A stretch of DNA of 64,000 nucleotides from the NCBI RefSeq assembly GCF_963853765.1, contig NC_088855.1, positions 58,280,001-58,344,000 on the forward strand, given 5' to 3'. The translations under genes were made by a program, and so were the position numbers. Origin of the DNA: Magallana gigas. Taxonomy: Eukaryota. The notes under the pieces were generated by a model, which ran no database searches, was not told the origin of the DNA, and saw only the letters and a list, made by a program, of their open reading frames with translations. Of this stretch, positions 18,901 through 24,900 are shown piece after piece (positions within the stretch are counted from its first letter, which is position 1; each line of letters begins with the position of its first letter).

Positions 18901-21900
18901 CATTAATCGTTAAATCTAAATCTCTAAATAAAAGGAAAATCAGGAAATAGTCAGCAAGGACTGATAATGAACATAGGTTAATGGCTCTTTCCTTGTATGC
19001 AATACTTGAATGTCATTAAAAATAAAACATCTCATTCAAATGATATTCTATTCGTCTATACATGTATCTCATAAAAATTCCCACTTACCATGACCTGAAC
19101 AGTAAAAAAATAATAAAGTTCTCTTCAAATATTACTGATGCTGTGAAAGATGAACAAATTTCAGCATGTTCAATTACTTACCCAGACTGAAGCCATTAAC
19201 AAGAACTTATTCTGACTGTAACAAGGACCTCCCCGGACTTTAATTAACATTGACTAGCTCTAACTTAATTCTTGATTTACCCAAACCTTAACAAGGACCA
19301 ACCCAGTATGTAGAAATGAGTTAGCTCTGATTTACCCATACTCCAGCCTTGACTTGTATGTACCTGTGCCCAGACTTTGGCATCAATTTACTGACTCTAG
19401 CACTGACTTACCTGGACTTCAGCACTATGACTTACCCATACTCTAGCATGTTCTTACCCGGACTGTTGCAGTGAATGATGAGGATGTTTGCCATGCCTTC
19501 ATATTTGACTCCAGAGTTGCTATTCTTTATACCATTTAGGAATTCAGTTAGGAGGTTCTGACACCTTAAATCCAAAAACAAAACCTATAATTAGCCTGAC
19601 AGGAATTCCAATTCATACAACAGGAAATTCAAAGGGCAAAAAAACAACCAACATAATCAACGCATGGAAAAAAAAACACAACAAGGAAACTACTTGAACT
19701 TTGGATTCACATGAGGGTACTTGTTTAAAACATTAAATCAAATTTGCTAGGAAGCTAATGATATTACTAAAAGTAATTTAAGTAGTAGTAAACATACATT
19801 TTGCTTATCTCTGGATTTGAATCTCCCAGGATGTTAAATAACCCATCCAAGAATTCAGGCAGAAGGACTACCATGTTGATGTCTGGCACAGCATCCAGTA
19901 TAGTTATCTGTAATACACAAAATTCAGTATAGTTATCTGTAATACATAAAATTCAGTATATTTATCTGTAATACATAAAATTCAGTATAGTTATCTGTAA
20001 TACACAAAATTCAGTATAGTTATCTGTAATACACAAAATTCAGTATATTTATCTGTAATACATAAAATTCAGTATAGTTATCTGTAATACACAAAATTCA
20101 GTATAGTTATCTGTAATACACAAAATTCAGTATATTTATCTGTAATACATAAAATTCAGTATAGTTATCTGTAATACACAAAATTCAGTATAGTTATCTG
20201 TAATACACAGCATTCAGTATAGTAATCTGTAATACATAGCATCCAGTATAGTTATCTGTAATACAAAGCATCCAGTATAGTTATCTGTAATACACAGAAT
20301 CCAGTATTGTTATCTGTAATACACAAAATCCAGCATAGTTATCTGTAATACATAGCATCCAGTATAGTTATCTGTAATACAAAGCATCCAGTAAAGTTAT
20401 CTGTAATACACTAAATCCAGCATAGTTATCTGTAATACACAGAATCCAGTATAGTTATCTGTAATACATAGAATCCAGTATAGTTATCTGTAATACACAG
20501 AATCCAGTATAGTTATCTGTAATACATAGAATTCAGCATAGTTATCTGTAATACACAAAATCCAGCATAGTTATCTGTAATACACAGAATCCAGTATAGT
20601 TATCTGTAATACACAGAATCCAGCATAGTTATCTGTAATACATAGCATCCAGTATAGTTATCTGTAATACATAGAATCCAGTATAGTTATCTGTAATACA
20701 CAGAATCCAGTAGAGTTATCTGTAATACACAAAATCCAGCATAGTTATCTGTAATACATAGAATCCAGTATAGTTATCTGTAATACATAGCATCCAGTAT
20801 AGTTATCTGTAATACATAGAATCCAGTATAGTTATCTGTAATACATAGAATCCAGTATAGTTATCTGTAATACACAGAATCCAGTATAGTTATCTGTAAT
20901 ACACAGAATCCAGTATAGTTATCTGTAATACACAGAATCCAGTATAGTTATCTGCAATACATAGAATTCAGCATAGTTATCTGTAATACATAGAATTCAG
21001 TATAGTTATCTGTAATACATAGAATCCAGTATAGTTATCTGTAATACACAGAATCCAGCATAGTTATCTGTAATACATAGAATCCAGTATAGTTATCTGT
21101 AATACACAGAATCCAGTATAGTTATCTGAGATACACAGAATTCAGTATAGTTATCTGTAATACACAGAATCCAGTATAGTTATCTGTAATACACAGAATC
21201 CAGTATAGATATCTGTAATACACAGAATCCAGTATAGTTATCTGTAATACACAGAATCCAGTATAGTTATCTCTGCTACATAGCATCCAGTATAGTTATC
21301 TGTAATACACAGAATCCAGTATAGTTATCTGTAATACATAGCATCCAGTATAGTTATCTGTAATACATAGAATTCAGTATAGTTATCTGTAATACATAGA
21401 ATCCAGTATAGTTATCTGTAATACATAGAATCGAGTATAGTTATCTGTAATACACAGAATCCAGTATAGTTATCTGTAATACACAAAATCCAGTATAGTT
21501 ATCTGTAATACACAGAATCCAGTATAGTTATCTGTAATACATAGCATCCAGTATAGTTATCTGTAATACATAGAATCCAGTATAGTTATCTGTAATACAC
21601 AGAATCCAGTATAGTTATCTGTAATACATAGAATCCAGTATAGTTATCTGTAATACACAGAATCCAGTATAGTTATCTGTATTACACAGAATCCAGTATA
21701 GTAATCTGTAATACACAGCATTCAGTATAGTAATCTGTAATACACAGCATTCAGTATAGTTATCTGTAATACAAAGCATCCAGTATAGTTATCTGTAATA
21801 CAAAGCATCCAGTATAGTTATCTGTAATACACAGAATCCAGTATAGTTATCTGTAATACACAGAATCCAGTATAGTTATCTGTAATACATAGAATCCAGT

Positions 21901-24900
21901 ATAGTTATCTGTAATACATAGCATCCAGTATAGTTATCTGTAATACACAGAATCCAGTATAGTTATCTGTAATACACAGAATCCAGTATAGTTATCTGTA
22001 ATACACAGAATCCAGCATAGTTATCTGTAATACACAGCATTCAGTATAGTTATCTGTAATACAAAGCATCCAGTATAGTTATCTGTAATACAAAGAATCC
22101 AGTATAGTTATCTGTAATACATAGAATCCAGTATAGTAATCTGTTATACACAGCATTCAGTATAGTTATCTGTAATACACAAAATCCAGTATAGTTATCT
22201 GTAATACACAGAATCTAGTATAGTTATCTGTAATACATAGAATCCAGTATAGTAATCTGTAATACACAGCATTCAGTATAGTAATCTGTAATACACAGCA
22301 TTCAGTATAGTTATCTGTAATACAAAGCATCCAGTATAGTTATCTGTAATACAAAGCATCCAGTATAGTTATCTGTAATACACAGAATCCAGTATAGTTA
22401 TCTGTAATACACAGAATCCAGTATAGTTATCTGTAATACACAAAATTCAGTATAGTTATCTGTAATACACAGCATTCAGTATAGTAATCTGTAATACACA
22501 GCATTCAGTATAGTAATCTGTAATACACAGCATTCAGTATCGTTATCTGTAATACAAAGCATCCAGTATAGTTATCTGTAATACAAAGCATCCAGTATAG
22601 TTATCTGTAATACACAGAATCCAGTATAGTTATCTGTAATACACAGAATCCAGTATAGTTATCTGTAATACATAGAATCCAGTATAGTTATCTGTAATAC
22701 ATAGAATCCAGCATAGTTATCTGTAATACATAAAATCCAGTATAGTTATCTGTAATACACAAAATCCAGTATAGTTATCTGTAATACACAGAATCCAGTA
22801 TAGTTATCTGTAATACACAAAATCAAGTTTAGTTATCTGTAATACATAGAATCCAGTATAGTTATCTGTAATACATAGAATCCAGTATAGTTATCTGTAA
22901 TACAAAGCATCCAGTATAGTTATCTGTAATACATAGAATCCAGTATAGTTATCTGTAATACATAGCATCCAGTATAGTTATCTGTAATACACAGAATCCA
23001 GTATAGTTATCTGTAATACACAGAATCCAGTATAGTTATCTGTAATACACAAAATCCAGCATAGTTTTCTGTAATACATAGAATTCAGCATAGTTATCTG
23101 TAATAAACAGCATTCAGTATTGTCATCTATAATACACAAAGATTCTGTGTCTACACTGTTAGGCATTCTGAATTGTGTTTAAAGATCACTGCTTTAAAAT
23201 CCTTGTACAGGACTATATAGAGATATATGTAATGTGTGTGATTACAGTCTATGTATTACCCAGGACACGATGAACTGGCGGGCCTCGGGGTTCTTGGCGT
23301 AGATGCGGTCCCTCAGGAGGGGCATGAAGGCCATTAGGTCAAAGGACGGGCTCTCCGTCACAATGTCCTACAAATACAGAGGTTACCACTCATTGAGGAT
23401 GTTAACATGTACAGTGATACATAAAGTGGAATCAGCTCTACTGCTTGATGTTGATTCTCTTGACATCCAAATACAGGTCAGATTTTCATTGAATACATAT
23501 TATGTTTCAATACACACAAAAACACAATGACAGTGCTGCCATCAAAATTTTGAGATGGCGGAAATACAGTATAATAACATAGGAACATGAATGAAAGTTA
23601 AACATTCAAATATTCAAAATGCTACGAATCTCTTTCATCCAAAACAGAGAGCAGGTGACGCTGTTGAGGTAGTAATTTTCTTTAGATGCTTTCCTTGATA
23701 AGATGCTGAGCTTGATTAGATTCTTACCTTGCAGAGGTTCATACCTACATGAGATTCTTACCTTGATTAGATTCTTACCTTATTGATATGCTTACTTTGA
23801 TCAGCCTGTCCAATAGTTCTAACCTTGATCAGCCTGTCCAGTAGTTCTTACCTTGATCAGCCTGTCCAGTAGTTCTTACCTTGATCAGCCTGTCCAGTAG
23901 TTCTTACCTTGATCAGCTTGTCCAATAGTTCTTACCTTGATCAGCCTGTCCAATAGTTCTTACCTTGATCAGCCTGTCCAGTAGTTCTTACTTTGTTCAG
24001 CCTGTCCAATAATTCTTACCTTGATCAGCCTGTCCAATAGTTCTTACCTTGATCAGCCTGTCCAGTAGTTCTTACCTTGATCAGCCTGTCCAATAGTTCT
24101 TACCTTGATCAGCCTGTCCAGTAGTTCTTACCTTGATCAGCCTGTCCAATAGTTCTTACCTTGATCAGCCTGTCCAGTAGTTCTTACCTTGATCAGCCTG
24201 TCCAGTAGTTCTTACCTTAATCAGCCTGTCCATTAGTTCTTACCTTGATCAGCCTGTCCAATAGTTCTTACCTTGATCAGCCTGTCCAATAGTTCTTACC
24301 TTGATCAGCCTGTCCAATAGTTCTTACCTTGATCAGCCTGTCCAATAGTTCTTACCTTGATCAGCCTGTCCAATAGTTCTTACCTTGATCAGCCTGTCCA
24401 ATAGTTCTTACCTTGATCAGCCTGTCCAATAGTTCTTACCTTGATCAGCCTGTCCAATAGTTCTTACCTTGATCAGCCTGTCCAGTAGTTCTTACCTTGA
24501 TCAGCCTGTCCAGTAGTTCTTACCTTGATCAGCCTGTCCAATAGTTCTTACCTTGATCAGCCTGTCCAATAGTTCTTACCTTGATCAGCCTGTCCATTAG
24601 TTCTTACCTTGATCAGCCTGTCCAGTAGTTCTTACCTTGATCAGCCTGTCCATTAGTTCTTACCTTGATCAGCCTGTCCAATAGTTCTTACCTTGATCAG
24701 CCTGTCCAATAGTTCTTACCTTGATCAGCCTGTCCAATAGTTCTTACCTTGATCAGCCTGTCCAATAGTTCTTACCTTGATCAGCCTGTCCAATAGTTCT
24801 TACCTTGATCAGCCTGTCCAATAGTTCTTACCTTGATCAGCCTGTCCAATAGTTCTTACCTTGATCAGCCTGTCCAGTAGTTCTTACCTTGATCAGTCTG

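What the first reader, a model, noticed from the sequence alone, without database searches (positions are those of the whole stretch)
19891..23150. About 110 tandem copies of the VAC14 exon 6 acceptor fill most of a 3.35-kb intron
The unit is 17 nt of intron end (ending TATTACAG) plus the first 12 nt of exon 6 (ATAACTATACTG). The spliceosome must pass about 110 near-identical AG sites and use the last. Any upstream copy reads I-T-I-L-(D/N)-x-V-Y-Y-R-stop (TAC AGA TAA), a premature stop. The ~10 exon-proximal units carry a more U-rich variant (ATTTTGTGTATTACAG / ATTTTATGTATTACAG) than distal ones (ATTCTGTGTATTACAG), suggesting selection on tract strength or recent proximal expansion. Without the array the intron would be only about 120 nt. 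How the correct site is chosen (e.g. exon definition from the downstream donor) is a real mechanistic question.
Basis: partly seen in the sequence, partly recalled or inferred. Interest (0 to 1): 0.8.

Follow-up and report, generated by a model that had tools for sequence, protein, structure and literature searches.

The report
Splice-acceptor minisatellite in oyster VAC14
A 29-base piece straddling the start of exon 6 of the oyster VAC14 gene has been copied 112 times in tandem, swelling a roughly 130-base intron to 3.35 kb, yet the mRNA still uses only the last copy; it is an extreme example of a repeat type already known from amphioxus and a few human genes.

Summary
On the minus strand, 19887-23138 is a gap-free 29-nt x 112 array. 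Each unit is the last 8 nt of intron 5 (TATTACAG) plus the first 21 nt of VAC14 exon 6. The unit occurs nowhere else in the 564-Mb oyster genome. RNA contigs from two independent studies join exon 5 (ending at 23260) to exon 6 (starting at 19907), so the last AG is the one used. All 124 other AGs in the intron lead to an early stop codon.

Some decoys match the real site from -39 to +12, so the choice must depend on the exon body, on the exon's donor, or on position. No RNA structure stands out.

The same gene carries three more junction-anchored arrays: the exon 4 donor (28 nt x 69), the exon 7 donor and the exon 10 donor. Random placement would give this with P of about 6e-4. A clam ortholog has short, array-free introns at these positions.

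This is a "mirage" minisatellite, as in amphioxus Adh3 and globin genes. Human F7, IFI6 and CBS carry the donor version. It is therefore a new and extreme member of a known kind. The scan has already noted many such arrays elsewhere in this genome.

The parts
19887..23138 (-). 29-nt x 112.1 minisatellite. Each unit is TATTACAG plus a copy of the first 21 nt of exon 6. Unit 0 (19887-19915) is the authentic intron/exon junction.
   Evidence: TRF. Register listing. Per-position conservation. Private to this locus in the genome.
19908..19909 (-). The AG of the 3' splice site that is actually used (the last of 125 AGs in the intron).
   Evidence: RNA contigs X16 (depth 60.8) and X18 (depth 16.1) align over 19796-19908 and then continue with exon 5 sequence. 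That 30-mer is unique to 23261-23290.
19798..19907 (-). VAC14 exon 6 (110 nt, begins I-T-I-L-D-A-V-P-D; donor AAT|GTATGT).
   Evidence: tblastn to VAC14 homologs. Alignment with homologs. Exon 6 to exon 7 joint in an RNA contig.
23260..23367 (-). VAC14 exon 5 (108 nt, 36 codons; donor TGG|GTAATA).
   Evidence: The loose-end match links it to exon 6.
19908..23259 (-). Intron 5, 3352 nt, of which 3231 nt are array.
23139..23259 (-). Non-repeated 5' part of intron 5 (121 nt). With the decayed edge unit it holds a CCTAAC branch-point-like motif at 23163-23158, the likely branch point of the ancestral short intron (inference).
   Evidence: sequence reading.
19916..20205 (-). Exon-proximal units 1-10: a subfamily with CTGAAT and TTTT in place of CTGGAT and TTCT, arranged as an 87-nt (3-unit) higher-order repeat.
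23791..25724 (-). Companion array in intron 4: 28 nt x 69.1, made of the last 23-25 nt of exon 4 plus GTAAG. 65 of 69 units keep ATCAAGGTAAG.
   Evidence: TRF. Sequence. Private to this locus. Unit table.
23684..23801 (-). Decayed older generation of 17-nt donor units (ATCAAG|GTAAGAATCTA-like) at the far end of the donor array.
25700..25762 (-). VAC14 exon 4 (63 nt, ends E-L-L-D-R-L-I-K; donor AAG|GTAAGA).
19393..19464 (-). 22-nt x 3.2 decayed donor array starting at the exon 7 donor.
17083..17487 (-). 78-nt x 5.2 array whose first unit spans the exon 10 donor (GGAGGAG|GTACC).

Best explanation
This is a 'mirage'-type minisatellite: a tandem array whose founding unit straddled a splice junction.

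Origin (inferred). A 29-bp segment, made of the last 8 nt of a short ancestral intron (about 130 nt) and the first 21 nt of exon 6, was duplicated in tandem, probably by slippage between the short TGTG repeats that bound it. Unequal exchange then expanded it to 112 copies. Growth went only into the intron, so the coding sequence is untouched.

Site choice. The array needs no function. It is tolerated because the spliceosome uses only the copy that is followed by the real exon body and its 5' splice site, that is, exon definition, or 'the copy that makes the shortest exon wins'. The same rule would explain use of the first of 69 donors in intron 4, which protein homology requires.

Decoys. Each decoy copy is a plausible 3' splice-site module, with a TAAC at -25, a weak pyrimidine tract and a CAG. 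Use of any decoy gives a stop codon within 54 codons at most (usually 10), so such transcripts would be cleared by nonsense-mediated decay.

Shown: the anatomy, the privacy of the unit to this locus, use of the last AG in stable mRNA, and the stop codons.
Inferred: the slippage origin, exon definition as the selector, decay of mis-spliced RNA, and neutrality.
For: - Array anatomy and exon homology.
- The unit is found only at this locus in 564 Mb.
- RNA contigs of two studies join 23260 to 19907.
- All 124 other AGs give a stop codon.
- Decoys 3 and 6 differ from the real site by 1 nt in -60..-1 and are identical up to +12. The discriminating information must therefore lie at +13 or beyond, or in position.
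- No unusual RNA structure (z -0.27 and -0.32).
- Variation sits at six variant positions with few singletons, and there are higher-order repeats. Both are typical of minisatellite turnover.
- The clam ortholog has the same exon boundaries but introns of about 446 and 603 nt with no arrays, so the arrays are derived.
- Independent DNA runs from 8 studies hold the exon-proximal units. Array words are about 70-100 times deeper than flanking single-copy words in run X3.
- Precedents with silent decoys: PMC3087553, PMC3902484, PMC1557585.
Against: - Four of the five arrays inside VAC14 are junction-anchored. Random placement in the array-free gene gives P of about 6e-4, so birth or retention is not random, and a purely neutral, untargeted origin does not explain this.
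- TATTACAG and AG are almost invariant across units. This could reflect constraint rather than homogenisation.
- Use of decoys at a low level could not be measured. Only one raw RNA read covered the site, and contigs drop rare forms.
- Exon definition would be expected to discriminate poorly between the real AG and decoys only 29-87 nt upstream.
Confidence: 0.68

Rival explanations
1. The array is a selected regulator. More than 100 decoy acceptors, together with 68 decoy donors on the other side of exon 5, would titrate U2AF/U2 and U1 or divert a tunable share of VAC14 pre-mRNA into unproductive, decay-targeted splicing. Copy number would then set VAC14 output.
For: - The splice-signal part of the unit is the best conserved (106 of 112 TATTACAG, 112 of 112 AG).
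- Every decoy leads to a stop codon.
- Exon 5 is flanked by arrays on both sides.
- The proximal units carry a better branch-point-like motif and a U-run.
- In human IFI6 and CBS the nearest decoy donors are in fact used (PMC1557585).
Against: - Only the canonical junction appears in the RNA contigs of two studies.
- Similar arrays sit in many unrelated genes of this genome, which fits a mutational process better than gene-specific regulation.
- The near-invariance of parts of the unit is equally expected from recent expansion.
- The clam ortholog manages without arrays.
Confidence: 0.12
2. Splice junctions in this genome are hot spots for minisatellite birth, through a process coupled to transcription or splicing, or through preferential expansion of exon-derived sequence combined with selection against purely exonic arrays. 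The VAC14 arrays would be extreme products of that targeted process. This concerns origin and is compatible with the best explanation for how splicing copes.
For: - Four of five VAC14 arrays are junction-anchored against a chance of 6-23% each.
- Two generations of donor units sit at the same exon 4 junction.
- Two more apparently donor-anchored arrays (exons read by eye, no Pfam support) appear in a random 200-kb sample, and two more in other genes of the window.
- Many unchecked notes across the genome describe the same thing.
- Amphioxus authors also suspected a general phenomenon (PMC3087553).
Against: - No mechanism is known.
- The window was picked because it is striking, so the statistic is post hoc.
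- The share of exon and intron in the units varies widely between arrays, which does not point to one fixed break point.
- Only 200 kb of unbiased sequence could be sampled.
Confidence: 0.35
3. Assembly artefact: the array is much shorter in the real chromosome and was inflated during assembly.
For: No long genomic read could be laid on it. No PacBio run was listed, and the read tool refuses long repeats.
Against: - The 112 units comprise 38 types in an aperiodic order with no indels, unlike a collapsed or stuttered assembly.
- The genome has only 29 contigs, of which contigs 1-10 are 37-76 Mb long and sum to about 563 of 564 Mb.
- Array words are about 70-100 times deeper than single-copy flanks in an independent DNA run, and a contig of that run bridges exon 6 into the first unit.
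Confidence: 0.04

Closest known systems
Amphioxus 'mirage' minisatellites (Adh3, globins BflGb6 and BflGb9, TnC, PGBD5; Canestro et al. 2002 as cited in PMC3087553, and PMC3902484)
   Same: Both are tandem repeats whose unit spans an exon-intron boundary. Both 5' and 3' boundaries can be affected, many units keep AG or GT signals, and normal splicing is not disturbed. BflGb6 is an acceptor-type case (3' end of the intron plus 5' part of exon 2). Repeat turnover with decayed edge units is seen in both.
   Different: The phylum differs (mollusc versus cephalochordate). The unit here is 29 bp, against 150-160 bp in BflGb6. There are 112 copies here against 3-6. Two large arrays flank one exon. 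Length and somatic instability, which were shown in amphioxus, were not tested here.
Human F7 intron 7 VNTR (37 bp x 5-9), with IFI6 (6-16), CBS, LMNB2 and PDGF exon-border minisatellites (PMC1557585)
   Same: The first monomer contains the junction, identical pseudo-sites follow it, and only (or mainly) the exon-adjacent site is used. The exon 4 donor array of VAC14 is a direct analogue.
   Different: All the human cases are donor arrays with at most about 25 decoys. The finding here is an acceptor array with 111 decoys, where the last copy rather than the first must be chosen. The 5'-to-3' 'oriented scanning' proposed for F7 cannot by itself explain selection of the most downstream acceptor.
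Branch-point-to-first-AG scanning model of 3' splice-site choice (cited as widely accepted in PMC1557585)
   Same: Each unit offers a branch-point-like motif 16-25 nt upstream of the next AG, so the AG used should be fixed by which unit supplies the branch point.
   Different: The model does not say which of 112 equivalent modules recruits U2. The authentic site now has to use a branch point lying in exon-derived sequence of unit 1, because the ancestral CCTAAC is 3.2 kb away (inference).
Intron gain or extension by tandem duplication across AG|GT proto-splice sites (the Rogers model, as discussed in PMC3087553)
   Same: A duplication that includes a splice signal leaves one copy to be spliced out and so lengthens intronic sequence without changing the protein.
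   Different: No new intron is created here. An existing intron is enlarged about 25-fold.

Membership tests
Mirage (junction-spanning) minisatellite | Head-to-tail tandem array with a minisatellite-size unit (about 10-160 bp). | tested here: met
   29 nt x 112.1 copies, 93% matches, no indels.
Mirage (junction-spanning) minisatellite | The unit contains both intron and exon sequence, and the terminal unit is the authentic exon-intron boundary. | tested here: met
   Unit 0 is TATTACAG plus the first 21 nt of exon 6. The exon start is fixed by RNA contigs and by homology.
Mirage (junction-spanning) minisatellite | Repeated units keep the splice signal (AG or GT). | tested here: met
   AG in 112 of 112 units and CAG in 110 of 112.
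Mirage (junction-spanning) minisatellite | Regular splicing is not disturbed: the authentic site is used. | tested here: met
   RNA contigs from two studies carry the exon 5 to exon 6 junction at 23260|19907. No contig with a decoy junction was listed. Low-level decoy use was not measurable.
Mirage (junction-spanning) minisatellite | Allelic or somatic length instability. | tested here: inconclusive
   No long reads were available. DNA runs of 8 studies hold 80-95% of the words of the proximal part. One 59-mer that is single-copy in the reference has about 3 times single-copy depth in run X3, which hints at variation but does not prove it.
F7/IFI6-type exon-border donor minisatellite | The first monomer spans the exon-intron border, so the 5' splice site is reiterated in the intron. 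| tested here: not met
   The array in question reiterates a 3' splice site, not a 5' one. The neighbouring exon 4 array (23791-25724) does meet this feature.
F7/IFI6-type exon-border donor minisatellite | The exon-adjacent copy is the one used. | tested here: met
   Met for the acceptor array by RNA. For the exon 4 donor array it is only inferred, from the conserved ...LIK|DIVTES junction and from stops after any decoy.
Dispersed satellite or transposon-derived tandem repeat | Copies of the unit occur at other loci in the genome. | tested here: not met
   All 110 hits at up to 2 mismatches lie in this array. The same holds for the donor unit, 68 of 68.

The most novel reading that the evidence does not exclude
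The oyster genome, like amphioxus, has a process that seeds and expands minisatellites specifically at splice junctions. It might be coupled to transcription or splicing, or it might reflect a higher expansion propensity of exon-derived sequence. Under this reading, arrays like these would be a major and so far undescribed driver of intron growth and of hidden splice-site load in molluscs. The VAC14 exon 5 region, with 68 decoy donors upstream and 111 decoy acceptors downstream, would be its most extreme natural test bed for exon definition.
Probability: 0.3. Interest if true: 0.8.

Novelty: new member of a known kind. Interest (0 to 1): 0.5.

Why it matters
This is a natural competition experiment on 3' splice-site choice. 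There are 111 decoys, some identical to the real site from -39 to +12, and the most downstream site wins. Together with the 69-copy donor array on the other side of exon 5, where the most upstream site must win, it argues that the copy giving the shortest exon is chosen. That is exon definition operating in a lophotrochozoan, at an intron that was ancestrally short.

It also shows how one 29-bp duplication can enlarge an intron 25-fold. It adds a mollusc to the short list of animals with 'mirage' repeats. And it marks a likely length-variable locus inside a conserved regulator of PI(3,5)P2 synthesis.

On its own it remains a member of a described class, and no function is indicated.

Tried and rejected
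- RNA structure as the selector. Nine internal units, and separately the last five units plus exon 6, fold no better than shuffles (z -0.27 and -0.32).
- Recursive splicing. The junction of the exon 5 end with a unit start (TGG|ATAACT) does not regenerate a 5' splice site (read from the sequence).
- Pairing between the two arrays. The donor and acceptor units share a direct, not inverted, similarity (AACTAT..TGGA), so no stem is expected (read from the sequence).
- Dispersed repeat or transposon origin. Rejected.
- Laying reads on the whole array. The raw RNA run X24 gave a single unspliced read, too little to measure decoy use.
- Long-read DNA runs. None was listed (the first try failed as busy).
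- PDB sequence search with exon 6. Only chance HEAT-like hits to transportin, and no VAC14 chain.
- Close relatives. P0002 (92% identical over exon 3) sits on a 1.3-kb contig that does not reach introns 4-5. A metagenome scan for the exon/array junction found nothing. The age of the array within oysters is therefore unknown.
- Genome-wide sampling.
- Pfam on short exon pieces next to the arrays in L023 and in the SLC23-like gene. No hits. Those exons are read by eye only.
- The original 'mirage' paper (PMC117041) is not held and is cited second-hand.
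Full report
**What is there.** The window encodes VAC14 on the minus strand. Pfam finds Vac14_Fab1_bd (E 8.6e-21) in exon 3 and Vac14_Fig4_bd (E 1.9e-19) in exon 12. tblastn with seven longer (575-785 aa) homologs maps 15 exons between 30154 and about 14350. Exon 5 is 23260-23367, exon 6 is 19798-19907, and intron 5 is 23259-19908 (3352 nt).

Tandem Repeats Finder reports a single array at 19887-23138: period 29, 112.1 copies, 93% matches, no indels. 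Written in register on the minus strand, every unit is TATTACAG followed by a copy of the exon 6 start. Unit 0 is the real junction.

Similarity to the exon runs for 21 nt (through GATGCTGTG, codons D-A-V), after which the exon continues CCAGAC while the repeats continue TATTAC. The founding segment was therefore 8 nt of intron plus 21 nt of exon, bounded on both sides by TGTG. Only 121 nt of the intron lie outside the array, so the ancestral intron was about 130 nt.

**More than chance, and private.** A 23-nt core of the unit, at up to 2 mismatches, occurs 110 times in the 564-Mb genome, all in this array. The reversed control gives 0. The array is not a dispersed satellite or transposon fragment.

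The organism is an oyster. DNA runs labelled 'oyster metagenome' and a coded 'organism A' hold the stretch. Contigs 1-10 are 37-76 Mb long and sum to about 563 of 564 Mb.

**Which AG is used.** RNA contigs of two independent studies (X16, depth 60.8; X18, depth 16.1) align over 19796-19908 and then run on with 30 letters that occur in the window only at 23261-23290, the end of exon 5. Stable mRNA therefore joins 23260 to 19907, and the last of 125 AGs is used. The exon 6 to exon 7 joint is also seen.

Short RNA contigs at 2-10x depth lie inside array units. Because these words are repeated up to about 100 times in the pre-mRNA, this fits ordinary unspliced precursor. No contig with a decoy junction was listed. 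However, contigs drop rare forms and the raw run gave one read, so low-level decoy use is unmeasured.

**Consequences of a wrong choice.** I translated exon 5 joined to every other AG in the intron. All 124 give a stop.

**Is the array real?** It has 38 distinct unit types in an aperiodic order. In an independent DNA run (X3), array words are about 70-100 times deeper than the single-copy flanks, and a 125-nt contig bridges exon 6 into unit 0. Eight studies hold the proximal units. No long-read run was listed, so the exact copy number rests on the assembly.

**Internal structure.**
- Variation is concentrated at six unit positions (11, 17, 21, 24, 25, 27). All other positions carry only rare changes; nine are invariant, AG among them, and TATTACAG is kept in 106 of 112 units.
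- Blocks of 6-7 units recur (for example units 62-68, 81-87 and 89-95).
- Units 1-10 form an 87-nt, three-unit higher-order repeat of a subfamily that appears otherwise only once.
- The far end is decayed (units 109-112).

This is the usual picture of minisatellite turnover, with recent growth next to the exon. The proximal subfamily differs by C to T, which gives a U4 run, and by G to A, which turns CTGGAT into CTGAAT, a branch-point-like CTGAA 16 nt from the AG. Selection on unit 1 followed by neutral spreading is possible. The higher-order pattern alone is explained by recent expansion.

**How the right site can be chosen.**
- Decoys 3 and 6 differ from the real site at 1 of 60 upstream positions and are identical up to +12. 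The intrinsic 3' splice-site signals therefore cannot discriminate. The information must lie at +13 or beyond (the exon 6 body and its donor, 110 nt downstream) or in rank order.
- Folding shows no special structure (z -0.27 and -0.32).
- The exon 5 end plus a unit start does not rebuild a 5' splice site, so recursive splicing is out.
- The ancestral CCTAAC (23163-23158) is now 3.2 kb from the real AG. The branch point in use must therefore lie in exon-derived sequence of unit 1 (TAAC at -25 or CTGAA at -16). This is an inference.

The simplest rule that fits is exon definition: the 3' splice site nearest the U1-bound donor of exon 6 is the one stabilised.

The same rule would explain the second array. 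Intron 4 holds 69 copies of a 28-nt unit made of the exon 4 end plus GTAAG (23791-25724), also private to this locus. 65 of 69 units keep ATCAAGGTAAG, and every one of 70 decoy GTAAG sites gives a stop 16-18 codons after exon 4. The conserved ...LIK|DIVTES junction requires use of the first donor. In both arrays the copy that makes the shortest exon wins, not the one that makes the shortest intron.

**A pattern, not a one-off.**
- VAC14 has two further junction arrays: the exon 7 donor (22 nt x 3.2, 19393-19464) and the exon 10 donor (78 nt x 5.2, 17083-17487).
- A decayed 17-nt donor generation sits behind the 28-nt array.
- Only one of the five arrays in the gene (14657-14741) is not anchored.
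- Placing units of these lengths at random in the array-free gene gives junction-spanning chances of 0.06-0.23 each. The probability that at least four of five are anchored is about 6e-4. This statistic is post hoc, because the window was chosen for being striking.
- Two other genes in the window show donor-anchored arrays.
- A random 200-kb sample of the genome yielded two more in one gene, plus one acceptor-like array. The flanking exons there were read by eye only; Pfam was silent.
- The scan's own notes list dozens of similar cases in this genome, including another acceptor array in ATP9B. These are leads, not evidence.

**Derived state.** The orthologous gene of a clam (GCA_021730395.1) has the same exon boundaries, introns 4 and 5 of about 446 and 603 nt, and no tandem repeat there. 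I could not reach closer relatives.

**Comparison with what is known.** Tandem repeats that span exon-intron boundaries were named 'mirages' in amphioxus. The cases are Adh3, with units of 10-72 bp, and the globins BflGb6 and BflGb9. BflGb6 is an acceptor-type case with 3-6 units of 150-160 bp. Splicing stays normal, the arrays vary in length, and the authors suspected a general phenomenon in cephalochordates (PMC3087553; PMC3902484).

In humans, donor-type exon-border minisatellites are known in F7, IFI6 (25 pseudo-sites), CBS, LMNB2 and PDGF. For F7, 50 constructs showed that the pseudo-sites are functional but that the most upstream site is chosen (PMC1557585).

The VAC14 array meets the testable defining features of a mirage. 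Length instability could not be tested. It is not an F7-type donor array, though its neighbour in intron 4 is.

I found no paper in the searchable library describing such arrays in oysters or other molluscs. That is absence from this library, not proof of novelty.

**Verdict.** The observation and the reading are confirmed. The class is known. This case is an extreme acceptor-type member in a new phylum, paired with a large donor array around the same exon. The open question worth following is why junctions are over-represented among array sites in this genome.

Noticed in passing
window 23791-25724 (and 23684-23801): Intron 4 of the same gene holds 69 tandem copies of the exon 4 end plus GTAAG, with a decayed older 17-nt donor-unit generation behind it. 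Every decoy GTAAG gives a stop 16-18 codons after exon 4. Without the array, intron 4 would be 423 nt.
   Followed up: yes
window 19393-19464: A 22-nt x 3.2 decayed array starts at the exon 7 donor. Two of its decoys (G|GTAAGT and CAG|GTAAGT) match the donor consensus better than the real CGG|GTAAGA.
   Followed up: partly
window 19459: The reference has G, giving exon 7 the end ...TCCGG. RNA contigs of two studies read A (...TCCAG), a likely polymorphism at position -2 of the exon 7 donor.
   Followed up: partly
window 17083-17487: A 78-nt x 5.2 array whose first unit spans the exon 10 donor (GGAGGAG|GTACC). About 30 nt of each unit is exon-derived, with a 3-nt indel relative to the exon.
   Followed up: partly
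window 61389-61811: A 56-nt x 7.6 array continues from an apparent SLC23-like exon end (...PYPG, CCCAG|GTACAC). The units lack 15 nt that are present in the exon. Pfam on the 49-aa exon piece gave no hit.
   Followed up: partly
window 43031-43672: A 41-nt x 15.5 array begins at an apparent donor (CACTGG|GTAAGTCATCAC). The units keep GTAAGTCATCAC[GA]TGAC, which also contains CACGTG.
   Followed up: partly
L023 3491-3937 and 4969-6201 (G000:C5:10000001-10010000): In a randomly sampled 10-kb stretch, two consecutive apparent exons of one gene are each followed by tandem copies of their own end plus GTAAGT. The first array is 56 nt x 8. The second is a 1.2-kb series of decaying units of 49, 32 and 64 nt behind an exon with a calcium-binding-EGF-like cysteine pattern.
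   Followed up: partly
L038 482-976 (G000:C10:30000001-30010000): A 33-nt x 15 array whose units end in CCCACAG|AGCCCC. The last unit abuts an apparent 75-nt exon ending GGAA|GTAAGT, so this may be another acceptor-type array. A 47-nt x 8.6 array lies just upstream.
   Followed up: no
window 13307-14101: A 146-nt x 5.5 tandem repeat just downstream of the last VAC14 exon. Its unit shares a short GACCTTGA string with long tandem repeats seen in the clam locus L017. It is probably element-derived and not junction-anchored.
   Followed up: no
window 7709-8079: A 15-nt x 24.8 array (TCAATGGGGTCATCA). The period is a multiple of three. It was not examined for coding or junction context.
   Followed up: no
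window 26033-26092: A run of N in intron 3 of VAC14.
   Followed up: no
L017 23216-24546: The clam VAC14 ortholog keeps the exon 4, 5 and 6 boundaries, with introns of about 446 and 603 nt and no tandem repeats. The gene as a whole spans 47 kb, with long element-like repeats in other introns.
   Followed up: partly
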